From Selaginella moellendorffii (taxonomy: Eukaryota; Plantae; Lycopodiophyta), in contig NW_003314375.1 in the NCBI RefSeq assembly GCF_000143415.4, positions 186,001 to 250,000 on the forward strand: a stretch of DNA of 64,000 nt, given 5' to 3'. Shown here piece after piece: positions 19,699 through 35,714 of this stretch (position 1 is the first letter of the stretch; each line of letters opens with the position of its first letter). The notes under the pieces were generated by a model that was not told where the DNA came from, did no database searches, and saw nothing but the letters and a program-made list of their open reading frames with translations. Both the position numbers and the translations under genes were made by a program.

Positions 19699-21996
19699 AT
19701 GACTTTCGGCGGCAAATCCTCACCACCATCTCTGACTTATAGCAGGACAATTCTCTTCGTGTTCTTCCTCGAGTTCTTGAGCTCGGCGAAGATGGTTCTC
19801 GGACTGGGCGGTATGTGTTCTATCGCTGCCTCGTACGGGGAGGACGATCCATTGTTTTGCGCGGTCGAGGCGACGTTCGAGCAGCAAGTGTTTTGCTGGG
19901 GGAGGAATGAGAGCTTGGAGTGGCCGTCGACGGGTCCGGCGATGCTGGGTCTCTCGGGTGGAATGGGATTTATGTGTGGGATCGCGGCCGGGAGCCAGCG
20001 TCCCTTTTGCTGGCGGAAGAACCTCACGTCGATCAACATCGTCCCCGAGCAGTTCCAGAACACGAGCTACGATTCCATCGCCGCTGGCGACGGCCATGTC
20101 TGCGCTGCTCGCTCCCAGGACGCGCTGGTGGACTGCTGGAACGGGGACGACAGCCTTAACGTGCCGCGCGGCGTGACGCTGCGGTCCCTGGTCGCGGGGC
20201 GGAGGTTTGTCTGCGGTATAGAGACCGGCGATGGCGGTACCGCGCGGTGCTGGGGCGATGCCAACCTTGCCGCCACGGCTCCGCCTGGTGACGTGGAGTT
20301 TGAGTCGCTGTCTGCCGGCGGCGAGCACGCGTGTGGGATTGTGAGGAAATCGAGGGAGATTCGGTGCTGGGGGGACAACCGGCTTGGTCAGACGGACGCA
20401 CCGCGCGGTATACCTTTCGTGGTTCTCAGCCTGGGATTGAATCACGGGTGTGCCGTGCGGCAGGACACGCACGGCGTTATGTGCTGGGGGCGGGGGTTTA
20501 ATGCGTCGGCGGCGCCAGACCGGACGGAGTTCTTGGCGCTGGCCTCGTCGCGCGTCGTGACGTGCGGTGTACGGGAGGATAACCTGCTCGTGGTGTGCTG
20601 GGGGAATGGCACGGAGTTCGCGCCGCCGCTGCAGCTGTCGAGCCCCGGAGTGTGTACCGCCGCGCCGTGCAGTGCGGGAGAGTTTAGCTTTAACGCGTCC
20701 AGCCTGGGCGTGGTTACCGCGGGGTTGTGCTCGAGCAGCACACAGCAGGTGTGCGCGCCGTGCGCGAGCGACTGCTCGAATGGATCGTTCGTGTCGGCAC
20801 CCTGTGGCGCGAATGACAACCGGCGGTGCACTGATTGCTCGCTGTGCGAGACGAGCTTGTGCCGCGGGCTGTGCCACTTGTCGCCGGCGCCCGAGAGCAG
20901 CGCTGTTGGGGTGGAAGAGCGGCGGCACCGCGCGGTAAGCCTAGCGGCGGTACTGGGTGCCGCCATCTCTGGCGGCGTCGTGGTGGCGGTGATTGGGCTG
21001 TTGGCTTGGTGCTGCTTGCAGCGGCGGAGGGGGAGATGGTGGCGGAACAGCGGCAGCGGGAGATCGGGGGACGGCGCCTACGGCCACCAAAACGGCGGCA
21101 CCGGCACCGGCACCTCCGGCGGCATGCAGCTGCAGTCGGTTGGCTCCGGCGGCATACCGTGCGTCAAACCGCCCGAGGCCTTGCGGTACCGGCTGTCCGA
21201 GCTCCGGGACGCCACGGGCAACTTCAAGGAGGTGAACGAGCTGGGCCGCGGGAGCTATGGCTTCGTGTACAAGGCGGTCTTGGGCGACGGGCAGCTGGTG
21301 GCGGTGAAGCGCGCGAATGCGGCGCAGAGGATTCACGGCAGCAGCCGGGATTTCGACGCGGAGCTTGAGATCTTGTGCAAGCTCCGCCACGCCAACATTG
21401 TCAACCTGGTGGGCTACTGCGGGGAGATGGGCGAGCGGCTCCTCATCTACGAGTTTATGCCGCACGGTACGCTGCGCGACCACCTCCACGGCGGGCTCTC
21501 ACCGCTGGGGTGGGGACTGAGGCTTCGCGTCGCCGCGCAGGCCGCCAGGGGCCTGGAATTCCTCCACAAGGAGGACGTCATCCACAGGGACGTAAAGTCT
21601 GCGAATATTCTCCTGGACGCGGAGTGGTCGGCCCGCGTCGCCCCGCCGGACGCGGGGTACCGCGATCCGGAATATTCCACCGCGCCGCGGATGACTGCCG
21701 CGGATGACGTGTACGGCTTTGGGGTGGTGCTGCTGGAGCTGCTGTCCGGCAGGAAGGCGTACGACTGCGAGTTTGAGCCGGCAGGGGTGGCGGAGTGGGC
21801 TGGGCCGTTGATTAGGACGGGGCGGTGGGCGGAGGTGGTGGATCGGGCGGTGGAGGGGCCCCGGAGTGTGGAGCCGGTGGCGAGGCTGGCGGAGATAGCG
21901 GAGAAGTGCGTGAGGGTGAGGGCGGAGGAGCGGCCGCCAATGGGCCAAGTTGCGGTGTGGTTGGAGCAAATAGCTCAAGGGAGTGGATCTTTGTAA
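19699..21996 (+). CDS. CRINKLY4-related receptor-like (pseudo)kinase, CCR1/CCR2-like
   Basis: Intronless GC-rich 765 aa ORF: signal peptide, crinkly/RCC1-like repeats (CWG), TNFR-like Cys region, TM helix, and a kinase with GRGSYG, VAVK, HRDVKSAN but no DFG. Confidence 0.92.
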   Translation: MTFGGKSSPPSLTYSRTILFVFFLEFLSSAKMVLGLGGMCSIAASYGEDDPLFCAVEATFEQQVFCWGRNESLEWPSTGPAMLGLSGGMGFMCGIAAGSQRPFCWRKNLTSINIVPEQFQNTSYDSIAAGDGHVCAARSQDALVDCWNGDDSLNVPRGVTLRSLVAGRRFVCGIETGDGGTARCWGDANLAATAPPGDVEFESLSAGGEHACGIVRKSREIRCWGDNRLGQTDAPRGIPFVVLSLGLNHGCAVRQDTHGVMCWGRGFNASAAPDRTEFLALASSRVVTCGVREDNLLVVCWGNGTEFAPPLQLSSPGVCTAAPCSAGEFSFNASSLGVVTAGLCSSSTQQVCAPCASDCSNGSFVSAPCGANDNRRCTDCSLCETSLCRGLCHLSPAPESSAVGVEERRHRAVSLAAVLGAAISGGVVVAVIGLLAWCCLQRRRGRWWRNSGSGRSGDGAYGHQNGGTGTGTSGGMQLQSVGSGGIPCVKPPEALRYRLSELRDATGNFKEVNELGRGSYGFVYKAVLGDGQLVAVKRANAAQRIHGSSRDFDAELEILCKLRHANIVNLVGYCGEMGERLLIYEFMPHGTLRDHLHGGLSPLGWGLRLRVAAQAARGLEFLHKEDVIHRDVKSANILLDAEWSARVAPPDAGYRDPEYSTAPRMTAADDVYGFGVVLLELLSGRKAYDCEFEPAGVAEWAGPLIRTGRWAEVVDRAVEGPRSVEPVARLAEIAEKCVRVRAEERPPMGQVAVWLEQIAQGSGSL

Positions 21997-24806: not shown

Positions 24807-25676
24807 TCAAGCTTTGGTGGCCAGCATTGCTGTAGCAACTCCAGCGATTCCAACGGTGAGAGCAATGCTTCCTCCATACTTGGCTCCAAACTCAGCAAAG
24901 TTGACGCAGGAATCCATGGCGGCATAGCCCTCCGCGTAGATTTCCTTCCCGACGATGTTGTAGATGGCGCGAAGTGGAGCGAGCACGGCCTGGTATGCGT
25001 GTGGGAGGTACTCAGTTGCGCCAATGGCATCAAAGAGGGAGTCCAGGAACCACTCGCTGTGAGAGGAAGCCTCCACGTTGTTAACCATGATGTTGCCGGA
25101 GAGAGTGAATGGGTTGTAGAGACCCAGCTTCTCCACCTTGGAAAGCTCTATAATTGTCAGAAGTAAGAGCAAAGTCTCAAAAGAAGTATGATGTTACCAG
25201 TGATTTGAGATGATCCCCAGAGAGTTTCTCCAACCTGGAGATCCTTGGCTCGCTTGTACACAAGCTTTCCCTTGGCGTCGACTGGGATGAAATGGCCCTC
25301 GCTAAGCTCGATCATGTCTGAGGCGGTGTGGACCTGGATGAACTCGGAGATCACATCGGCGTCCTTGTGGCCAAATGCGTAGATATCGGAGAATACGTTT
25401 TTGCTCACTGCAACCTTTAGATCTGGCACGTTTAGATGGGCTTTCGAAAAACTTAAGAGCAATACAATACCTTGTCTCCAACTTCGAGATCTCTCATGAG
25501 TTTGAGGTCGCCGTTATACATTTGGACGGTGGCATCGCCTTTGCAAACATAAAGCCTGTGATTGGCTGTAAAATCGCTTGCAGATTCTTACCTGGGAAAC
25601 ATGAGGTGTTGGTCGCTAGAACAACGCTAGCAAGAACAGCGAAGAGAGAAGTAGCAAAGAAAAAAGTGTGAGCCAT
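24807..25676 (-). CDS. Secreted Hedgehog-type Hint (Hog) domain protein, copy 1 (4 exons)
   Basis: Spliced: MAHTFFFATSLFAVLASVVLATNTS-CFPGDATVQMYNGDLKLMRDLEVGDKVAV...SDIYAFGHKD...IELSEGHFIPV...AKDLQVGETL...GLYNPFTLSGNIMVNNVEASSHS, then an SRR-like helical region and a hydrophobic C-tail. Confidence 0.93.
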
Positions 25677-26156
25677 AGAGAACTCTACACTGTGAAAGCC
25701 TAGAAAGATAGGAAAAGAAGCTCTAGAAGCGATGTTAAATCCTAGAAACGAGTGCCTATGACATAAGGCTAACCGATCAAGTTGGTGATCCTAAAACTTT
25801 GATATCAAGAATTATTTAATTCTAAGTACATATTTGAGATGCCGCATCATTGACAAGAAAGCTCTCCGTAGCAATTTATTTAAATAATGACTACGAAAGA
25901 AATTAAATGTTCATTAAGCAAAATAATGCGAGTTATGGAGTTTCAAGGAATATCCTAAGAACCTTGCCCTAAAAGTGTCTAGGGTGGTGTGAGCGCAGCA
26001 GCTATCGGTGGATCTACTCGCGGATAAAGCTATCAGTGGATCTGCCCAGCACACTCGCGGATAAACTCTTGCTCCTGGTTGGGCGGCATGTTTTGGCGGC
26101 GGCTTTTTGGAGGTGAGTGAGTAGAAGAGCGCAAGAGCCCAGCTAACATTTAGCTT

Positions 26157-28113
26157 GTGGGCGCAGGAGTTGCCCGCGGATGCAGCACGCTCGCGGAAAC
26201 TCTAGCTCGGGCTCGAGCTCGGCCGCGTGCTCCTGCTCCTCCTCTCAAGCTCGTCTACGATAACACCACCACCTCCTTGTTCCTCTTCTGCGATATCTGC
26301 TACAACCGGCAGTTGACTGCATGCGGCTGCCCCGACACGACGTTACGCGATCACCTGAGCTACGCTCACGGAAACATCTGCCCCAAGCAGCGTCGTACAC
26401 ATGCAAATGCCCTTTACTGGGGAGCGCCTTGGAGCATTCCAGCCTACTTGTATGACAACGAAATGGAGCCTTCAATGACGCCGCTGGAGCCATGCCAGAT
26501 CAGGAGCATCGAAGCCGTGGGCTGCATTTCCACGTTCGAGCTCGGCCTGCGGTGTCGGGGTCCTCCGGCGGAATTCGTCATCGATGGAACTTTAGGAGAG
26601 CTTGATGCTAAACAAGTCCTCGTCTATAAGGAATCCATCTGGCAGAATCGGGTCCCCACTGGCTACATCCTTCTGGCGGTTCCCACCAAGGCATTGCAGT
26701 ATGGCTCTCTGGACTGGGTCGTCAACTACGACGACTTCCGGGGCAAGCCCATGACACTGTCGGCCAGGAAGTTCGTCCAGGCGTCTCATGACCGTGGAGA
26801 GGATCCTGTCAAGGAGCTGGACGCTGTGGACGCGATCGGGATCAGAAAGTGCGTCGTGGTGGATCTCCGTGGTATTGGCATCAATAGAAAGATGGGCCTC
26901 TTTTTCACCGAAGATGCTCTATGCGACGTGCTGCCGTGTGTGGCTGGCACCAAGCTTGTCCCTGCCAAGGCAGTCTTTGACGATCGTCTTTGGGACAAGC
27001 TTGGTGTCCAGGGCAGGGTGGCCAAGGACGCGGCCGTATGTGACATAATGCATTCAGAGGGAATCAGAGATGATGTTGCTCAAGTCGCAAGTAAATCATT
27101 CTTCCTTATTACTCGTGAAGTTTAATTCCATTTCATTTTTTTACAGGATTGTGGGGGTACATTGGACAAGGTCACCAATTCTCAGGACACAATGCTGCTC
27201 GAGCCAAAATCTAAGGTAAATCACTTTTCTTGTCATGCCAGAATATCAGGTAAATCAGTATCGTTTCTGTGATGCTTACTCCTGTTCTTTCACAGACTAA
27301 GGCTGGAGAATGTTTATTCTCCACTGCTGTGCTGGCTGGTAATGCAAAACACATTCCGTGCTCAAAAACCAAGTGTGGCGGCCTTACAATGATGCTTTGT
27401 GAAAATCCAAATTGCTTAGCTAACAACGTGATGAGATGGGCAACACAGGCGATGTTTAGGATCTTTCTCGGCAAGCAAATATTTTTAGCTTCTAATCTAA
27501 AATGTTTTTGTACTTTCAGAGCGGCATTTAGGAAAGGACCCTGGGACTAAACTATCTACATTGATCCAAAGTAGGAAATCAGTGTACAACATTCCTATCA
27601 TGGTATTATATTATATCATTTGATTTTTTTTTAAATTTTATTCTTTTAATTTTTTTAGGTAGTGCTGGAAGCTTTACAAACAGCTAGGATTCTTAAAACT
27701 ACTGAATTTGAACTTCAACATATAAGAAGCATAGCACTTGGGATGAGCCTTAAGTATTCTGAGTTAGGTCAGTAGATAACTTTTTATATTTTTTTAGAAA
27801 ACAATTTTATTCTTTCTACAGATTCAAGGTTGGCTGGATTGGATGATTATTTGGCAATTTTTCATCATCATACTTTGTGAGTTTTTTATTTTTATATTTA
27901 AGTATCTAAATATTTATGTTTAAGAATCGACATTTTATAGCAAAAATTGGGTTCAACTTCAGTGATGATCTATGTGTGATATGTCCAGAAGCTGAAAACT
28001 GGTTGGAAGTTAGATATTTCTTTGCTGCTTATGCATTGTCAAAAGTTATTGGAGATATGAGAAACATCTCCACAAAATTGTTAGATTTGAATGGTAATGT
28101 GATATGGTGTTAA
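26157..28113 (+). pseudogene. Orphan multi-exon Cys/His-rich gene, probably decaying
   Basis: GC-rich 322-codon ORF (CDIC...HLSYAH) followed by short GT-AG-flanked exons (CSKTKC...CENPNC; ...NGNVIWC*). There is an apparent in-frame stop near 27550, and no homolog was recognised. Confidence 0.5.
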
Positions 28114-28206
28114 ACAATCAATATGAGTTATATCTTAAATATTCTTGGATATTTAGGGTTTAAGGTAATATATTTATAATATAATGAAAATTACTAAATT
28201 TAGATT

Positions 28207-30757
28207 TGTAAAGTTTGTAAATACATCTCTCTCTCTCTCTCTCTATATATGTATTACCCTAGCTAAGTAATACACTATTATTATACTATAACATATATAC
28301 TGTCTATTTGGGATTGAATTTAATCTATCCATTTTTGTATATAAGCAAGGGTCTAAACCCTAATTAATATATTTATTCTTATATCCCCAGCACTCACATT
28401 GGTGGAGATGAGGGGCAATGCAATTTATTTTTGAGAGGTAAAACTTTTTATTCTTATTTCTTCATTCTCTTTTAGATCTAAATCTGTATTAACTTTTTGC
28501 AAAATCTAAAATTTTAACTATCATTGTGCTTAGATTTACTTTTTTCTTTTAATCTTCATTACATTCTCTTTTTCTATCATGCCACATTGTCATCGATCAA
28601 GGAGTATATCATTTAAGGTAATTAATGTTGCTCTGTTGGATCGAACTTTTGTTGTTATGGGGTGTGATCATATTAATGGTATTTAATGTGTTGCCATTTC
28701 CAACTTTCATAGGACGTAATTACATAGCTTTTCCTATTCTTAGTGTTTTGCCATCTCTCGTTATTATGGAGCATGGTTATGATATTGATTGGAGAGCTAT
28801 GGATGATGCAATTTAGTTCTTGGAAAATGTTTGAGGATCAATTTTATAGAAAGACAATGTGTATAAACTTGAATGGATTCCATATCATTTTGACAAGCTT
28901 GATTATTATGAAGATAACTTTGGAGATAAAGTGGAGATTTCACGGGGTACATGTCAATTCTTCAATCTATCATCTGATCCTTTCTATTTACCTTTTATTT
29001 TTTCCCAACTTTTTCTTATTTCTTAGCCTAAGCCACCTACTCATGTTCCTAGTATTTCTTCCTCAAATGCAATGTTTTCTTCTTGTGGCACGTCAATCAT
29101 TTATAACTTTGATATAAATCTCAGAGTTATATCTAGTGTTGAGTTAAGTGTTTTATATTCTCCTCATACTAATCTGAATGTTAAATGTATGCATAAAGTT
29201 AAGAATCTTGTTTTTATTTCATTGGTAGAGTCTTTGATCAGTTTTGGTGTTGAGTATTCTTCTATTCCAAGGGTTAATTCACTTTGGCTAAAGTTTCGGA
29301 TTGAATATATATCCCCACTTGTGAGTGCTGCTAAAAACCTTTGCTTTACTATTATTGCTAAGGAGTTTATGTATTCCCTTGAAAGTGTGGACATTATTAT
29401 TAATTTTCTTGTCTTAAGTGTTGAGTTGTGTATTGAGGAGTTTGAGCAATATAAATCTTTTGTTTATATTGTGGTGGCTGAAGTATTTTATAATAAGAAG
29501 TCCCTTATTTTCCAAGCTTTGACCATATGTCATTATTTTGATTTCCACTTTGGCTAAAATTTCGGGTTGAATGTATGTCCCCACTTGTGAGTGCCACTAA
29601 GAGCTTTTGTTTTACTATTGTTGCTGAGGAGTTTATATATTTCCTTGAGAGTGTGAATGCTATTATTGATTTTCTCGTCTTAAGTGTTGAGTTATGTGCT
29701 GAGGAGGTTGAGCAGTGTGAATCTTTTACTTATATTATGATAGCTGAAATATTTTATAATAGGAAGTCCTCTATTTTTCAAGCTTTGAACATATGTCATT
29801 CTTTTGATTTCCCCATTCTATATTGCCAATTGCTATAAATTCCTCTTCCAATGCATCTTTATCTATTTTTTTTTCCACAATTGTTTTTCCTCAATTTTTC
29901 TCATGTTCTCCTTTCTGCCCTAACACTTTAAACTTTTTTTTCTTCAAAAGACGAGGTAGAGGGGATGGACAAGAGTCCGGCCTCAATGATGGAGTGAGGA
30001 TGAACAAATATGGTAATGGAGAGAGGATGAATGACATGGATTGTAAAGTGAAGATGAATATAGTAAGTAGGAATGGAACATCTAACCCAAACATAGTGAA
30101 GAACAAATATGATAATGGAATGAGGCTAAACATAAATGGTAGAGTGAGGATAAACACAACAAATCCTGATAGAGTTAGTATTTCAAAACTCTTTTTTCTT
30201 GCAATCTTGGACAAAGATGATAGTTCTACTTATAGTCTTAAGTTCGAGTTAATGGTGGTCTTGGAGGATCGTCAACAAGCAAACTTAAAAACAAGATGTA
30301 TTATTTATTGCAATAATTTTCTATGGACTGTAATGGCTCTTAAAGTCCTTTACTTTAATTGAAAGTTATGGTTGTATAGCTAGTTTGAGCATTTGGGAGT
30401 TGCAATTGATTCACCAGGATTCCATAGTCGACTAATGTTTATACCATGGCTTTTGTTTTATTTTAATCATGGTTATCAACAACTTTGTTGATGGTTTTAT
30501 AAATTCTTATGATAATTTATAATTGCCTAATAGAAACTCTATATGTTCCACCTGATTTATCATCATCACTTTTTCATCTTCCAGAGGGGAAGATGGTGTA
30601 AGGTTTGTAAATACATATATATATATACATGTATTACCTAGGTAATACACTTTATAATACTATAACATATGGAATGTCTATTTAGGACTGAATATAATCC
30701 ATCCATTCTTGTATATAAGCAGGGGTCTAAACCTTAATTAATATACTTATTCCTATA
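28207..30757 (+). mobile_element. Decayed non-autonomous LTR retroelement with tRNA-Ala primer-binding site
   Basis: 5' LTR 28207-28398 (TG...CA), PBS TGGTGGAGATGAGGGG at 28400-28415, polypurine tract agaggggaagatgg at 30583-30596, and a diverged 3' LTR from 30597 (truncated ~30757). No intact gag/pol. Confidence 0.85.
29280..29812. repeat. Two tandem ~265-bp copies inside the LTR element
   Basis: cactttggctaaa...ccccacttgtgagtgc...ttttccaagcttt...atatgtcatt occurs twice, starting ~29280 and ~29546. Confidence 0.85.
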
Positions 30758-30989
30758 AGTATAAGTATAAAAAAAATCAATAAGTACAACATAGAAATAT
30801 CTATTTATTCTTTATATTTTTTTTGTTACAATAATATCGATAAAAATAAAGTGATAATGGCTGAAGGCACATGGGCCATCCAATTGTAAGCCTTGGGTAG
30901 GTTCAATTTGCATGATTTCAATAAATTTTTAATAGATGTTTTGTTTGGCTAATGAAAACTTGGTTTATAACTTGCTTAAGTGAGATAAT

Positions 30990-32900
30990 ACAGATGTCCA
31001 TTTAGTAGATATTTAGAATATATTTGGATATTCTAGGATATTCTACCATTTAATTCTAGAACATTTAATGGTTAATGTGTAATAAATTTAATCTCATGGT
31101 TAGAAATTATAAAATTCCTATCAATCAATTATATTAATAAATAATAAGCACCACTATTAAACAAACAAAGCATTGGTATATATAAAGTGCAGTAAATCAT
31201 TTTTATATTTCTTTTAAAAACATTTCTGATTTTTGTTTACATAAGAATAAAGTAAGAGGCTTTAGATTCAAACACCAAATTGTATAACTAACTTAAACAG
31301 TCCTTGATAATGATGATATAATTGTTAGAAGGCATCATCACAATTATCAACATTTCTAAATGCATGCTTGAAGACATCTGGGAGGAGGTTCCACACTTAA
31401 ACCATTGTACCATTATAACATTGTCTCTTTGAGACATGTGGGAAACTCGTGCAAACATTAAATATCATTTCAAGAATGATAAATGGCAATTGTCATAAAT
31501 TGATTTAACCAATGATCAATATCATCCTTGGGATTTTTACAGAAAAAATTTGGTTGGACATAAGGATGGGCAGAAAGAGCAAGAAGAGTTGCACCATTTG
31601 CCATAAATATCACCATCAACTAAAATTAATTGTTTAGTTGCAACTATATAACATTAAACAATTATATTAATTATTGTTCCAGACTCAAAAAAGGAGGAAG
31701 CTATTGCTTTGCCATTAAGATGAATGAAATAAATAAAAGCAAAGAAAGAAGAAATGGAAAAAATATAAAAATGAAGAAGAATTAGATGATACAAAGTTAG
31801 ATCTAAACCAAAAACATAAATCTAAGCATTCCTCAGGACAATTAAAGTTACCCCTCAACTCTATCAATATAAATGCATGAAGTATAAAAATTTGTATGTC
31901 TGATTAGCCTAAAAACCTTAACTTATTTATAAGATCGAGTGTTCTCGATTGAAACCAATTTGATAATTATCAAAATCCCAACATGATAATATTAGTATAA
32001 AGCATTGTAGCCATACACTTAGACTTCATACCCATAGTTATACATCTTGACCTCAGATTTGTAGTTGTACCTTATAACGCTATATTTAATTTTTTTTATT
32101 AAACTAGTTTTTATTAAATTAATGAAACTAATCTTATAAAATTTGAAACTAATCACTTCATTTAATATATTATTTAAAAAATATATATACTTAGATTCAT
32201 AGTTAAAGTACTATTACTATTAATAAAATATTTTTAAAAGCATTATAATAGTATTTTTAGAACAAATCCTAATAATTTATTATGTTTAAGAATGTTTTTG
32301 ATAAACACCAGATTAATCTAATGGTATAAAGTTAGAGCTAGAAGGTGTTTAGGAAATTTTTGTAAAATATAATCATGTTTAAATTTAATAATAAAATTAT
32401 TATAAATAAATAATAACCCTTAAATTGTTATTATCATTCTGGAATATTCAACTATATTCTAGGTATATCCACTACCAGTTGGGAATAATAAAAATCATGA
32501 AATACAGTTTTCTTTTCTTTTTTCTATTTTTTGAAATATAAATTTTATTTTACTTGTGGTACATCAAGCCTTGGTTGTTTTAGATAAATAATATTAAATT
32601 GTGACACATTGCATTATAGAAAATTTTGATTTGCTTAGTTTGTATTAAAACAAATTATTATGATTTATGTATTACAAGAAAATGTTTTTCCTAGTTGAGC
32701 ATACGGTATAAACCACACAATACACTTTCCATCATGTTTAAGAATGTTTTTAACAAACACAAGTTTAACCTACTGGTATAAAAGCTAGATAAGCTAGAAT
32801 ATGCTATAATCATAAATTATAAACACGAGATTAATCTAAAGGAATAAATAACCATTAGATGGTAAAAAATTCTAAAATATCTAGGTATATCCACTAAACA
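30990..32900. repeat. AT-rich dispersed repeat remnants (several copies, both orientations), same family as 57670-57890
   Basis: The ggatattctaggatattctaccat / gattaatct motifs occur at ~31026, in reverse at ~32310-32470 and ~32810-32900, and again at ~57690-57870. Confidence 0.65.
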
Positions 32901-33000
32901 AACAATAAACCCATTGAGAATATATAAAAAAGAAGGGGAATAATCAAAAGCATAAAATATGTTAATAAAATTTACATTTTATTCTACTTCTGGTTTTTCA

Positions 33001-33875
33001 TCAAGCCTTCGTGGCCAGCATTGCTGTTGCAACTCCAGCGATTCCAACAGCAAGAGCGATGCTTCCTCCGTGCTTCATTCCAAATTCAGCAACGTTGACA
33101 CAAGAATTGACGGCAGCATAACCCTTTCCATAGATTTCCTTCCCGACGATGTTGTAGATGGCACGAAGTGGAGCGAGCACGGCCTGGTATGCATATGGGA
33201 GGTACTCAGTTGCGCCAATGGCATCAAAGAGGGAGTCCAGGAACCACTCGCTGTGAGAGGAAGCCTCCACGTTGTTAACCATGATGTTGCCGGAGAGAGT
33301 GAATGGGTTGTAGAGACCCAGCTTCTCCACCTTGGAAAGTTCTATAATTGTCAAAAGTAAGAGCAAAGTCTCAAAAGAAGTATGATGTTACCAGTGATTT
33401 GAGATGATCCCCAGAGAGTTTCTCCAACCTGGAGATCCTTGGCTCGCTTGTACACAAGCTTTCCCTTGGCGTCGACTGGGATGAAGTGGCCCTCGCTAAG
33501 CTCGATCATGTCTGAGGCGGTGTGGACCTGGATGAACTCCGAGATCACGTCGGCGTCCTTGTGGCCGAATGCATAGACATCGGAGAACACGTTTTTGCTC
33601 ACTGCAACCTGTAGATCTGGAACGTTTAGATGGGCTTTCGAGAAACTTAAGAGCAATACAATACCTTGTCTCCAACTTCGAGATCTCTCATGAGTTTGAG
33701 GTCGCCGTTATACATTTGGACGGTGGCATCGCCTTGCAAACATAAAGCCTGTGATTGGCTGTAAAATCGCTTGCAGATTCTTACCTGGGAAACATGAGGT
33801 GTTGGTGTTGGTAGCTAGAACAACGCTAGCAAGAACAGCAAAGAGAGAAATAGCAAAGAGTAAAGTGTGAGCCAT
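33001..33875 (-). CDS. Secreted Hedgehog-type Hint (Hog) domain protein, copy 2 (4 exons)
   Basis: Near-identical duplicate of 24807-25676 (shared block ~24791-25798 vs ~32985-33992); N-terminus MAHTLLFAISLFAVLASVVLATNTNTS-CFPG. Confidence 0.93.
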
Positions 33876-34004: not shown

Positions 34005-35714
34005 TTAACAGAGATTTTCTCTTATCTTTGAATTTGAGAGGAGCACAAACGCGGCATTATTGACAGGATCTAATCCAAGAACTCTCTCTACGGCTCGAGC
34101 TGTCGACTGATCGTCCTTGTGGCTTTTACAAGCACTTAGAATGCATCTCCAATCGGTGACTTCAGGCTGGAAAGGCATATGCTGGACGAGATCCTCGGCG
34201 TCTCTCAAGCGCCCAGCTCGTCCAAGAAGATCAACCATGCAGCTGAAGATCTGCCTCGTTAGAGCAAAGCAAAAGTCCGTTTGGATCGAGTGGAAGAACA
34301 CTCTTGCTCTTTGGGAACGTCCGGCACGACTGCATGCAATTAGCACGCAAATGAGAGAAATCTCATCCACTTCAAAACCATTTAGAAGCATAACGGAGAA
34401 GAGATCTAAAGCAGTGCAGTGGTGGCCATTGTGTGCAAATGCTACCAACAAAGTGTTCCAAGAAGCCATGCCCAGTTTGGGCATCCGATCTAGAAACCGG
34501 ACAGCCTCAAGTAGATATCCTTTTTGTGCAAATGCTCCTAGCATCTGATTCCATGAGATGCTATCTCTTTGGACCATGTTGTTAAAAACGCTGCTGGCAG
34601 CTTTGAATTCCTTGCGCTGGCCGTAACCAGCAAGAAGAATGTTCCATGAAACTAAAGATTTTTCTGGCATTTCGCTCAGGAAAGCCTCCATTTCATAGAT
34701 ATGCCCAAAATGGGCATACGCGTACAAGAGTGTATTCCAAGAGACCAAGTTTCTTTCGGGCATGGCGTCAAAGATCTTCTTAGATTCTTCCAAGTTCCAG
34801 GTTTGTGACCACGCAGCCAGAAGTGTAGTCCATGAAAAGAGATCTCGACAGTTCATAGTTTCAAACACTTTTAAAGTGGAGCTCAAATCTCCAACGTGGG
34901 CATAAGCAGCGAGCATGGAATTCCACGACACTAAACTCCACTCGGGCATTTGATCAAACAGTTTCTTAGCTCGATCAATATCACCACTTTGTCCAAATCC
35001 TGAAAGCATGGTGTTTCTAGTGACAGTGTCTTGCTCATCCAAACGAAGGAAAAGCTCCAGTGCATCATGAATAAGATTGTTCTTCACGTACGCACTGAGC
35101 ATCAAATTCCAGGAGAAATAGTTCCACTGTGGCATGGCGTAAAACACTCGTTTGGCCTCTTCAAGTTGTCCTTTCAAGGCAAATGCCGAAAGAAGCGCGT
35201 TCCAGCAAACAATGTCTCTCTCCACAGCAGTTTCAAACCAATACCTGGCTTCGCGGGTGTTCCCGTCTCGGGAAAACGCAGCTAGGATTTCAGTCCACGG
35301 GATGACACTCCACTCGGGCATCTGGTGGAATATCTCCGTGGCATCTCTAACATACCCGTTTTGGGCATATGCCGAGAGCATGGAATTCCAAGCCACAAGG
35401 TTCCTGTGAGGGATCCGATCAAAGAGCTCTTTCGCGCTATCGACGCGTCCGCTTCGCGCATAGCCATTGATCAACAGGACCCAAGTGAAAGCAGTCTTTG
35501 GATGCGTGGTGTCAAAGATGTGGTGGGCACGGTGGAGGCTCCCGCAGCTCACAAACATATGGAGTAACAAATTGGAGAGGAACGTCCCATCGGGACTGGA
35601 GAGATGGCCGGAGTTACGCACTGTTAGATAGACTCGCTCAGCTTCTTCGTGTACAGTCTTGCAAGATTTTACCAGTTGCACACATTCTTGTAACCCAAGG
35701 TTCTTATTTTCCAT
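34005..35714 (-). CDS. PLS-class PPR protein with E domain, no DYW
   Basis: Intronless 569 aa ORF of PPR repeats ending SCMVDLLGRAGRL...MPFQP...ILSACKSH...AAFVLLSN. Confidence 0.95.
   Translation of the reverse strand: MENKNLGLQECVQLVKSCKTVHEEAERVYLTVRNSGHLSSPDGTFLSNLLLHMFVSCGSLHRAHHIFDTTHPKTAFTWVLLINGYARSGRVDSAKELFDRIPHRNLVAWNSMLSAYAQNGYVRDATEIFHQMPEWSVIPWTEILAAFSRDGNTREARYWFETAVERDIVCWNALLSAFALKGQLEEAKRVFYAMPQWNYFSWNLMLSAYVKNNLIHDALELFLRLDEQDTVTRNTMLSGFGQSGDIDRAKKLFDQMPEWSLVSWNSMLAAYAHVGDLSSTLKVFETMNCRDLFSWTTLLAAWSQTWNLEESKKIFDAMPERNLVSWNTLLYAYAHFGHIYEMEAFLSEMPEKSLVSWNILLAGYGQRKEFKAASSVFNNMVQRDSISWNQMLGAFAQKGYLLEAVRFLDRMPKLGMASWNTLLVAFAHNGHHCTALDLFSVMLLNGFEVDEISLICVLIACSRAGRSQRARVFFHSIQTDFCFALTRQIFSCMVDLLGRAGRLRDAEDLVQHMPFQPEVTDWRCILSACKSHKDDQSTARAVERVLGLDPVNNAAFVLLSNSKIRENLC

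What the first reader, a model, noticed from the sequence alone, without database searches (positions are those of the whole stretch)
24807..33875. Duplicated secreted Hint/Hog proteins whose only cargo is a 4-6 aa glyco-sequon peptide
Seen: both spliced genes encode signal peptide (…V-L-A) / TNTS or TNTNTS / CFPG Hint domain / SRR-like helices / hydrophobic C-tail, and both keep an N-T-S sequon directly before the catalytic Cys. Known: Hedgehog Hint domains cleave before Cys1 through a thioester and transfer the N-terminal piece to a sterol; Hog proteins have been reported in seed-free plants, to my knowledge without a known function. Inference: with no N-terminal signalling domain, autoprocessing would release or ligate a tiny (glyco)peptide onto a lipid, sterol or wall acceptor, or expose an N-terminal Cys on a membrane-anchored protein. 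That would be an undescribed peptide-ligation or signalling system. The two copies differ in cargo length by one TN unit.
Basis: partly seen in the sequence, partly recalled or inferred. Interest (0 to 1): 0.85.

Follow-up and report, generated by a model that had tools for sequence, protein, structure and literature searches.

The report
Spikemoss Hog genes with stub cargo
These are two real, neighbouring spikemoss (Selaginella moellendorffii) genes for a Hedgehog-type self-cleaving domain that has only four or six residues to cleave off; one has been in a 2008 paper's supplement since then, so the gene and family are known and only what such a nearly cargo-less protein does is open.

Summary
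Two four-exon genes on the minus strand (24807-25676 and 33001-33875) encode 236 and 238 aa proteins. Each has a signal peptide ending V-L-A, a TNTS or TNTNTS stub, a CFPGD Hint domain, a conserved helical region and a hydrophobic C-terminal tail.

- Copy 1 matches, residue for residue, 'pSm Hog', built from two ESTs in the supplement of Burglin 2008. RefSeq annotates close copies as 'warthog protein 6'.
- The genes belong to a tandem array and to a Hog family of mosses, liverworts, lycophytes and ferns.
- Sister paralogues carry 30-70 aa cargoes (four-Cys knots or proline-rich modules).
- The stub varies (TNTS, TNTNTS, TNTNNS, TNTTG). The N-x-S-Cys arrangement is not kept outside the array.
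- The catalytic set is intact: Cys1, S/T-x-x-H, and a family-invariant His where Hedgehog has Asp46.
- dN/dS is about 0.15, even against the TNTTG paralogue at dS about 0.7.

My reading is that these are functional autoprocessing Hog modules with a vestigial, slippage-prone stub. A signalling glycopeptide is less likely. The chemistry is untested.

This scan had already flagged the TNTTG sister gene, 39 kb before this window (s1-433172).

The parts
24807..25676 (-). Hog gene copy 1 (= published 'pSm Hog'), 236 aa, four exons: 25676-25592, 25538-25471, 25414-25198, 25147-24807
   Evidence: Identical to the EST-derived sequence in the supplement of PMC2362128.
25614..25676 (-). Copy 1 signal peptide, 21 residues ending V-L-A
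   Evidence: The -3/-1 rule is from established knowledge. Paralogues keep the same A-ending c-region.
25602..25613 (-). Copy 1 stub cargo T-N-T-S (ACC AAC ACC TCA). The Cys1 codon follows at 25599-25601.
25062..25601 (-). Copy 1 Hint module, from Cys1 to A-S-S (includes introns 1-3). Key residues: His at the Hedgehog Asp46 position in F-G-H-K-D, and S-E-G-H in place of T-x-x-H.
   Evidence: Pfam hits; alignment to 6TYY and 1AT0; fold match
24906..25061 (-). Copy 1 adduct/sterol-recognition-like helical region (starts H-S-E-W-F-L-D), strongly conserved across the plant family
   Evidence: Invariant columns; helices 161-207 at pLDDT about 90; weak alignment to the SHH SRR; dN/dS 0.20-0.25
24819..24869 (-). 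Copy 1 C-terminal hydrophobic segment of 17 residues, followed by T-K-A and the stop. Membrane anchor: transmembrane favoured, GPI signal not excluded.
25677..25798 (-). Copy 1 5'UTR and proximal promoter block, shared with copy 2
   Evidence: Alignment; EST 5' end colinear with the genome
33001..33875 (-). Hog gene copy 2, 238 aa, four exons: 33875-33785, 33732-33665, 33608-33392, 33341-33001
   Evidence: Exon 4 is 98% identical to RefSeq-annotated P0151.
33813..33875 (-). Copy 2 signal peptide, 21 residues ending V-L-A
33795..33812 (-). Copy 2 stub cargo T-N-T-N-T-S, one ACCAAC unit longer than copy 1. The Cys1 codon follows at 33792-33794.
33100..33255 (-). Copy 2 adduct-recognition-like helical region
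33013..33063 (-). Copy 2 C-terminal hydrophobic anchor segment
33876..33992 (-). Copy 2 5'UTR and proximal promoter block shared with copy 1. It abuts the stop of the PPR gene at 34005.

Best explanation
What it is
- These are two tandem paralogues of the Hog (Hint plus adduct-recognition region) family of seed-free land plants, in Selaginella moellendorffii.
- Copy 1 is the published 'pSm Hog'.

How it most likely works (every step here is inferred)
- The protein enters the ER.
- Signal peptidase cuts after V-L-A.
- The C-terminal hydrophobic segment holds the Hint and helical module on the lumenal or extracellular face of a membrane.

The stub
- The four or six residue T/N stub is what remains of an N-terminal cargo. 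In sister paralogues that cargo is a 30-35 aa four-Cys knot or a 47-69 aa proline-rich module.
- Its length changes by slippage of an ACCAAC repeat.

Mechanism (inferred)
- The catalytic set is intact and the coding sequence is under purifying selection.
- So the module most likely still performs the N-to-S acyl shift at Ser-Cys.
- The thioester is then resolved by a membrane sterol or other hydroxyl positioned by the helical region, or by water.
- This sheds the stub and leaves a membrane-held Hog fragment with an N-terminal Cys.
- The selected function therefore lies in the Hog module or in the reaction itself, not in the stub acting as a sequence-specific signal.
For: Identity
- The closest proteins are all S. 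moellendorffii and are named 'warthog protein 6' or 'Hint domain-containing'.
- Copy 1 equals pSm Hog from ESTs DN839649 and DN837769.
- The window is 93-96% identical to GL377687.1, which carries at least three units of about 5 kb.

Fold and catalysis
- Pfam Hint scores 83 bits for P0151.
- Foldseek's top hits are 6TYY and 1AT0.
- HMMER aligns Cys1, puts F-G-H-K on the L-F-M-D/H-R of Hedgehog, and puts S-E-G-H on T-P-A-H.
- That His, the motif-B His and Cys1 are invariant in 22 of 22 family members.
- The Asp-to-His swap is active in Hedgehog (PMC9163320 section 11; PMC12054796).
- HhC does not need HhN and releases a short tag peptide (PMC4695875).

Selection
- dN/dS is 0.14-0.16 between the two copies.
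- It is 0.15-0.18 against the TNTTG paralogue, at dS 0.66-0.75.
- By region: Hint 0.13, helical region 0.20-0.25.

Cargo history
- The Selaginella clade has 100/100 support.
- The four-Cys pair is sister to an unresolved group of TNTTG, TNTNNS and proline-rich forms.
- Stub DNA is (ACC AAC)n.

Anchor
- The hydrophobic segment is conserved. In moss, liverwort and fern relatives it is followed by basic tails.
Against: - No experiment shows cleavage, a sterol adduct or glycosylation for any plant Hog.
- Cys143, which human and fly Hedgehog need for processing in cells (PMC12054796), is Ser here and variable across the family. The chemistry may therefore differ or be weaker.
- The T of T-x-x-H is Ser in the array copies.
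- Every non-empty stub keeps exactly one sequon. That would also fit a selected glycopeptide.
- Low dN/dS shows that the protein matters, not that the reaction happens.
- Gene conversion in the array blurs the pairwise estimates: synonymous difference is 0.45 in the last 46 codons against about 0.07 elsewhere.
- I could not lay RNA reads, so expression of copy 2 is unshown.
Confidence: 0.6

Rival explanations
1. The stub is the product. It is N-glycosylated on its single sequon and esterified by the Hint reaction to a sterol or other lipid or wall hydroxyl. This would give a small glycopeptide-lipid conjugate that acts as a signal or as a membrane or wall component.
For: - All four stub variants keep one N-x-S/T sequon.
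- The catalytic residues and the adduct-recognition region are conserved and constrained.
- HhC can transfer a short peptide to sterol (PMC4695875).
- Paralogues with proline-rich cargo suggest that glycosylated cargoes are used in this clade.
Against: - Stub length and sequence differ among recent copies through repeat slippage.
- The sequon's position relative to the Cys is not fixed (N-T-T-G-C in P0153).
- T/N/S-rich peptides contain sequons by chance, and four related variants are too few for a test.
- An Asn two residues after the signal-peptide cut is a poor oligosaccharyltransferase substrate while the signal is still attached. This is from general knowledge and was not tested here.
Confidence: 0.13
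2. The Hint centre is silent in vivo. The stub stays on, or signal peptidase or an exopeptidase trims it. The protein would work as a membrane-anchored, non-cleaving sterol- or ligand-binding module.
For: - Cys143 is absent and T69 is Ser.
- The -1 residue is Ser rather than the Gly of Hedgehog.
- There is no cargo whose release would need catalysis.
- The helical region and the anchor are conserved.
Against: - Cys1, the motif-B His and the His at the Asp46 position are kept in every short-cargo copy and in all 22 aligned relatives.
- Ser at -1 and non-Cys residues at position 143 also occur in cargo-bearing relatives. These features are family traits and not signs of decay.
Confidence: 0.15
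3. These are redundant array copies on their way to becoming pseudogenes after losing their cargo. The intact reading frames would then reflect recent duplication and gene conversion rather than function.
For: - The reference array holds broken gene models. The TNTS models P0158 and P0159 run out of frame in the last exon, and P0161 has no stub and a truncated end.
- The divergence pattern is mosaic, which fits gene conversion.
Against: - dN/dS is about 0.15 over dS about 0.7 against the unlinked-lineage TNTTG paralogue.
- Both window copies are intact.
- Copy 1 has two ESTs.
- The proximal promoter is conserved.
Confidence: 0.07

Closest known systems
pSm Hog and the moss/lycophyte Hog proteins of Burglin 2008 (PMC2362128)
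   Same: - Copy 1 is that very sequence.
- It has the same Hint module plus motifs after the Hint.
- It belongs to the same family as pPp Hog, whose relatives occur in Ceratodon, Marchantia, Diphasiastrum and Adiantum.
   Different: [quoted passage not shown]
- The window's genes have none, a point the paper's text does not remark on.
- The tandem array, the paralogue series of cargoes and the selection data are not in the paper.
Hedgehog C-terminal autoprocessing domain (HhC: Hint plus sterol-recognition region)
   Same: - Hint fold, with TM 0.82 to 1AT0 and 6TYY.
- Cys1 and the motif-B His.
- A helical region after the Hint.
- ER targeting.
- The general-base position is occupied by a residue (His) that works in the Hedgehog D46H variant.
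   Different: - No Hedge signalling domain.
- His instead of Asp46 in nature.
- No Cys143.
- Ser instead of Gly at -1.
- A C-terminal membrane anchor, whereas HhC is soluble.
- The nucleophile is unknown.
Nematode 'Short-hog' (XC Shog1 15 aa, Shog2 25 aa, Ts Xhog3 34 aa) and C. elegans Hog-1 ('Hog only'), from Burglin 2008
   Same: Secreted Hog proteins in which the part released after signal-peptide removal is very short or lacks any domain.
   Different: - They belong to a different Hog clade (the nematode-specific one).
- Their stubs are 15-34 aa rather than 4-6 aa.
- No C-terminal anchor is reported for them.
Choanoflagellate Hoglet and Xiphinema Thog (Thr/Ser-rich cargo)
   Same: Low-complexity, probably glycosylated cargo that changes by slippage. 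This resembles the proline-rich sister paralogues and the T/N repeat stub here.
   Different: Their cargo is tens to hundreds of residues long, and they are unrelated lineages.
Inteins and bacterial intein-like (BIL) domains
   Same: Hint fold and an N-terminal Cys nucleophile.
   Different: - No C-terminal His-Asn plus downstream nucleophile.
- No host protein to splice.
- Secreted rather than cytosolic.

Membership tests
Hog domain proteins (Hint module PF01079 plus SRR/ARR) | Hint fold | tested here: met
   Colinear Pfam hits on exons 2-4. P0151 scores 83 bits. The AF2 model matches 6TYY and 1AT0 with TM 0.82.
Hog domain proteins (Hint module PF01079 plus SRR/ARR) | Nucleophilic Cys at the first Hint position (motif A, C-F-P-G) | tested here: met
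   Invariant in 22 of 22 relatives.
Hog domain proteins (Hint module PF01079 plus SRR/ARR) | Motif B, T-x-x-H | tested here: met
   S-E-G-H aligns to T-P-A-H of 1AT0. The His is invariant. Thr is replaced by Ser in the array copies but kept in the paralogues.
Hog domain proteins (Hint module PF01079 plus SRR/ARR) | Helical adduct/sterol-recognition region after the Hint | tested here: met
   Helices 161-207 at pLDDT about 90. Invariant D, P, P, R columns. An 8-bit alignment to the SHH SRR.
Hog domain proteins (Hint module PF01079 plus SRR/ARR) | Autocatalytic cleavage with transfer to a nucleophile | not testable with these tools
   Needs protein chemistry.
Hedgehog proper (Hh) | N-terminal Hedge signalling domain | tested here: not met
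   Only 4 or 6 residues lie between the signal peptide and Cys1. There is no upstream exon.
Hedgehog proper (Hh) | Asp46 general base and Cys143 | tested here: not met
   His aligns at position 46 and Ser at position 143. His is functional in the D46H variant (PMC9163320).
Seed-free plant Hog family (Burglin 2008) | Sequence membership | tested here: met
   Copy 1 equals pSm Hog. The exhaustive search gave 457 relatives, 121 of them at E <= 1e-10. The named ones come from Ceratodon, Marchantia, Diphasiastrum and Adiantum.
Seed-free plant Hog family (Burglin 2008) | Conserved upstream region of about 230 aa, as in pPp and pSl Hog | tested here: not met
   Absent.
Inteins | C-terminal His-Asn followed by a Cys/Ser/Thr of a C-extein, inserted in a host protein | tested here: not met
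   The Hint ends A-S-S-H-S-E-W with no Asn, and there is no host protein.
GPI-anchored proteins | C-terminal signal: small omega-site residues, a spacer, and a hydrophobic end | tested here: inconclusive
   The tail is G-G-S plus 17 hydrophobic residues plus T-K-A. Relatives have basic tails of 7-30 residues after the segment, which fits a transmembrane anchor. No GPI predictor was at hand.

The most novel reading that the evidence does not exclude
A Hedgehog-type Hog module has a selected function of its own, independent of any protein cargo. One version: it builds small N-glycosylated peptide-sterol conjugates, a protein-templated glycolipid. Another version: it uses self-cleavage to unmask an N-terminal Cys on a membrane-anchored sterol-handling protein. 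Either would overturn the view that HhC-like domains are only disposable processing devices.
Probability: 0.15. Interest if true: 0.8.

Novelty: new member of a known kind. Interest (0 to 1): 0.4.

Why it matters
No Hog protein outside animals has a known function or a known nucleophile (PMC2362128, PMC13353863).

These genes are the smallest natural test case: a secreted Hint plus recognition region with a four-residue leaving group. That gives two practical advantages.
- Any adduct would be a small molecule of predictable mass that mass spectrometry could find directly.
- The protein carries in nature the His general base that was engineered into Hedgehog, and it lacks Cys143, so it can test which parts of the Hedgehog mechanism are ancestral.

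Purifying selection on copies that have almost nothing to release also hints that the Hog module may do something by itself.

Against this, the gene and the family are already published and annotated. Nothing here shows a new signalling system.

Tried and rejected
Steps that failed or led nowhere
- The look-up of sequencing runs gave 20 holders with word shares of 0.45-0.71, and none is on record as RNA. A spliced mRNA would hold at most about 0.73 of the words, but so would DNA about 1% diverged. I count this as only suggestive.
- The search for homologous proteins with P0001 found only S. moellendorffii proteins plus one metagenomic fragment.
- Among the best 150 representatives of the exhaustive search, no complete protein outside Selaginella has a stub of 6 residues or fewer.
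- Paper searches found no functional study of a plant Hog.
- The co-duplicated 322-aa ORF has no Pfam or Atlas relative.
- The sigma-70 and terminator scan is meaningless for a plant.

Readings I rejected
- Intein: no His-Asn and no host protein.
- An upstream exon adding an N-terminal domain.
- Signal peptidase cutting directly before the Cys, on the -3/-1 rule and the paralogue comparison.

Not done
- SignalP or GPI predictors (not available).
- Any search or fold of the joined window protein. The near-identical P0151 and P0153 stood in for it.
Full report
**1. What is in the sequence**

On the minus strand there are two genes with the same four-exon build.
- Copy 1 exons: 25676-25592, 25538-25471, 25414-25198, 25147-24807. 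It encodes 236 aa.
- Copy 2 exons: 33875-33785, 33732-33665, 33608-33392, 33341-33001. It encodes 238 aa.
- All three introns are 50-56 nt long with GT..AG ends.

The translations run as follows.
- Exon 1 gives a 21-residue signal peptide ending V-L-A, then T-N-T-S (copy 1) or T-N-T-N-T-S (copy 2), then C-F-P.
- A split Gly codon and exon 2 complete C-F-P-G-D-A-T-V.
- Exons 3 and 4 give the rest of a Hint module, a conserved region that starts H-S-E-W-F-L-D, and a hydrophobic end.
- The two stubs differ by one ACCAAC unit.

**2. Is it a Hint/Hog protein?**

- Pfam's Hint model (PF01079) hits exons 2, 3 and 4 in colinear order.
I used database proteins that are nearly the same instead.
  - P0151's exon 4 part is 98% identical to copy 2.
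  - P0153 is the TNTTG paralogue.
- P0151 scores 83 bits on Pfam Hint, E 2.7e-23.
- An AlphaFold model built on a 22-sequence family alignment has mean pLDDT 83.6. It shows a beta core at residues 28-156, helices at 161-207 with pLDDT about 90, and a terminal helix at 209-237.
- Foldseek's best PDB matches are the Drosophila Hedgehog Hint structures 6TYY and 1AT0 (TM 0.82 by target, rmsd 2.5 A). BIL domains and inteins follow.

**3. Catalytic residues**

HMMER's alignment to 1AT0 and 6TYY gives these correspondences.
- Cys1 falls on Cys1.
- S-E-G-H falls on T-P-A-H (T69, H72).
- The His of F-G-H-K-D falls on Asp46, the general base that activates cholesterol.
- 6TYY is the D46H variant, so the plant protein aligns His to His.
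- According to PMC9163320 (section 11) and PMC12054796, D46H keeps structure and activity and accepts more sterols.

In the family alignment Cys1, this His and the motif-B His are invariant in 22 of 22 sequences.

Cys143, which PMC12054796 reports as required for Hedgehog processing in cells, is Ser here. Across the family it is variable: S, A, T, V, P or C.

The region after the Hint is among the best conserved parts. W, D, P, Y-Q, P and R columns are invariant or nearly so. It aligns weakly (8 bits) with the sterol-recognition region of human SHH.

**4. Whose genes are these?**

- All close relatives are from Selaginella moellendorffii. NCBI names them 'warthog protein 6' or 'hypothetical protein SELMODRAFT', and UniProt calls them 'Hint domain-containing'.
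- Its entry 'pSm Hog' was built from ESTs DN839649 and DN837769. It matches copy 1 in all four exons, compared by eye.
- It starts with eleven codons of 5'UTR that read the same as the genome directly upstream of the ATG.
- So copy 1 is transcribed and spliced as modelled. Its sequence has been public since 2008.

The paper's text says the moss sequences share a conserved upstream region. That holds for pPp and pSl Hog. It does not hold for pSm Hog, which has only the four-residue stub, and the paper does not comment on this.

**5. No hidden N-terminal domain**

- An in-frame stop lies 39 codons upstream of the copy 1 ATG, with no Met between.
- The block of DNA shared by the two copies starts about 120 nt before the ATG and ends about 40 nt after the stop. 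Its introns are as conserved as its exons.
- The ATG of copy 2 lies 130 nt after the stop codon of a PPR gene on the same strand.

**6. Where does signal peptidase cut?**

No predictor was at hand.
- V-L-A fits the classical -3/-1 rule, with a small residue at -1 and a small or aliphatic one at -3. N-T-S before the Cys does not, because Asn at -3 is disfavoured. This comes from established knowledge and was not computed.
- The paralogue series supports the same answer. Signal peptides ending V-L-A, A-V-A, V-F-A and V-T-A are followed by cargoes of 5 to 69 residues (and by none in the broken gene model P0161) before the same C-F-P-G-D.
- The mature chain should therefore start T-N-T.

**7. The family and its cargoes**

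An exhaustive HMMER search with exon 4 found 457 relatives, 121 of them at E <= 1e-10. The named ones come from the moss Ceratodon, the liverwort Marchantia paleacea, the lycophyte Diphasiastrum and the fern Adiantum. Most carry 180-270 aa before the Cys. Others carry a hevein chitin-binding domain (P0021) or Cys-rich repeats (P0008).

Within S. moellendorffii the cargoes form a series.

| Cargo before the Cys | Proteins |
|---|---|
| None | P0161, a truncated model |
| TNTS, TNTNTS | the two window copies |
| TNTNNS | P0151, P0152 |
| TNTTG | P0153 |
| Four-Cys knots, 30-35 aa | P0157, P0004 |
| Proline-rich modules, 47-69 aa | P0003, P0154, P0155 |

A maximum-likelihood tree of the Hog parts gives the Selaginella clade 100/100 support. 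The four-Cys pair is sister to an unresolved trio of TNTTG, TNTNNS and proline-rich forms.

The stub state is therefore either ancestral to that trio or arose twice. Either way it is not a one-off accident. No complete protein outside Selaginella among the best 150 representatives has such a short stub.

**8. Array structure**

- The reference scaffold GL377687.1 carries at least three units of about 5 kb. Each unit holds a Hog gene and a divergently oriented ORF without known relatives.
- The window is 93-96% identical to these units.
- The window itself holds two Hog copies only.
- Some reference array members are broken gene models (P0158, P0159, P0161).

**9. Selection**

| Comparison | dN/dS | dS |
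|---|---|---|
| Copy 1 vs copy 2 | 0.14-0.16 | 0.16-0.18 |
| Window copies vs TNTTG gene (L002) | 0.15-0.18 | 0.66-0.75 |
| Same, Hint part only | 0.13 | 1.05-1.08 |
| Same, helical region only | 0.20-0.25 | 0.31-0.39 |

Counts were made exon by exon with the Nei-Gojobori method.

Divergence between the two window copies is mosaic. The synonymous difference is about 0.07 over most of the gene and 0.45 in the last 46 codons, where copy 2 resembles P0151. That points to gene conversion or unequal exchange.

The estimates are rough. They still show long-term constraint on proteins that have almost nothing to release.

**10. The anchor**

- The last 17-22 residues are hydrophobic.
- In Ceratodon, Marchantia, Adiantum and Diphasiastrum relatives the segment is followed by basic tails of 7-30 residues. 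This is the pattern of a single-pass anchor with a short cytosolic tail.
- In Selaginella only two or three residues follow (T-K-A, S-K-A, S-K-V) and the segment is Gly/Ala-rich. A GPI signal after G-G-S therefore cannot be excluded.
- Either way the Hog part would stay on the membrane, unlike soluble HhC.

**11. How it most likely works**

Shown:
- the gene models;
- expression of copy 1;
- the Hint fold;
- an intact catalytic set;
- a conserved recognition-like region and anchor;
- purifying selection;
- stub variability.

Inferred:
- ER entry;
- signal-peptide cleavage after V-L-A;
- an N-to-S acyl shift at Ser-Cys;
- attack on the thioester by a membrane sterol or another hydroxyl placed by the helical region, or by water;
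- loss of the stub, leaving a membrane-held fragment with an N-terminal Cys.

That a short peptide can serve as leaving group is known for HhC (PMC4695875). I take the stub to be a vestige of a lost or contracted cargo. I take the selected function to lie in the module or the reaction (confidence 0.6).

The rivals, with my confidence in each:
- the stub adduct is itself the product (0.13);
- the Hint centre is silent in vivo (0.15);
- the copies are decaying (0.07).

**12. Comparison with what is known, and verdict**

- The genes are members of the Hog family by every feature I could test.
- They are not Hedgehog proper: no Hedge domain, His in place of Asp46, and no Cys143.
- They are not inteins.
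- Their nearest analogues in build are the nematode 'Short-hog' proteins (15-34 residues released) and C. elegans Hog-1 ('Hog only'), both from Burglin 2008.

What remains of interest is a natural, minimal, expressed and constrained Hog module that could make the open question of non-animal Hog function testable. This scan has already reported the same build for the TNTTG sister gene (s1-433172) and the cargo-bearing paralogues (s1-388112, s1-402770, s1-424050).

**13. Limits**

I worked beside them and sent none of their letters to any search.
- The joined window proteins were not searched or folded. Stand-ins were used.
- No signal-peptide or GPI predictor was available.

Noticed in passing
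window 26157-27125 (+); L001 7604-9632, 12801-14716, 17682-19265: A 322-aa ORF lies head-to-head with Hog copy 1. In the reference scaffold it is repeated together with the Hog gene in each unit of about 5 kb. It has no Pfam family and no usable Atlas hit. It could be a real partner gene or just part of the repeat unit.
   Followed up: partly
window 28207-30769: An AT-rich stretch of about 2.5 kb (28-31% GC) sits between the two units and has no counterpart in the reference units. It is bracketed by 106-nt direct repeats (28278-28383 and 30652-30757) and contains a 266-nt tandem duplication (29280-29811). It looks like an insertion of a small repeat-flanked element.
   Followed up: partly
window 24810-24947 against 33004-33141: Divergence between the two copies is mosaic. 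The last 46 codons differ at about 45% of synonymous sites, against about 7% elsewhere and 3% in the introns. Copy 2's end matches the TNTNNS genes of the reference array. This is a sign of gene conversion or unequal exchange within the array.
   Followed up: partly
family alignment A2; window 25361-25363 and 33555-33557 (the His codon): All 22 aligned plant and other unnamed Hog relatives have His where Hedgehog has the general base Asp46. That is the same swap that was engineered as D46H (PDB 6TYY). None conserves Cys143.
   Followed up: yes
L001 (GL377687.1) and proteins P0158, P0159, P0161: The reference array includes broken gene models. A TNTS copy runs out of frame in the last exon. One copy has its signal peptide abutting the Cys directly (no stub) and a truncated end.
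   Followed up: partly
window 34005-35714 (-): An intronless 569-aa PPR-repeat ORF ends 130 nt upstream of the ATG of Hog copy 2. That leaves only a very short promoter region for copy 2.
   Followed up: no
window 19699-21996 (+): A 765-aa ORF in a 67% GC stretch has a Cys-rich ectodomain, one hydrophobic segment and kinase-like motifs. It is probably a receptor-like kinase. I did not check it against any library.
   Followed up: no
The tool itself says this is no evidence of anything. They were left out of all later searches.
   Followed up: no
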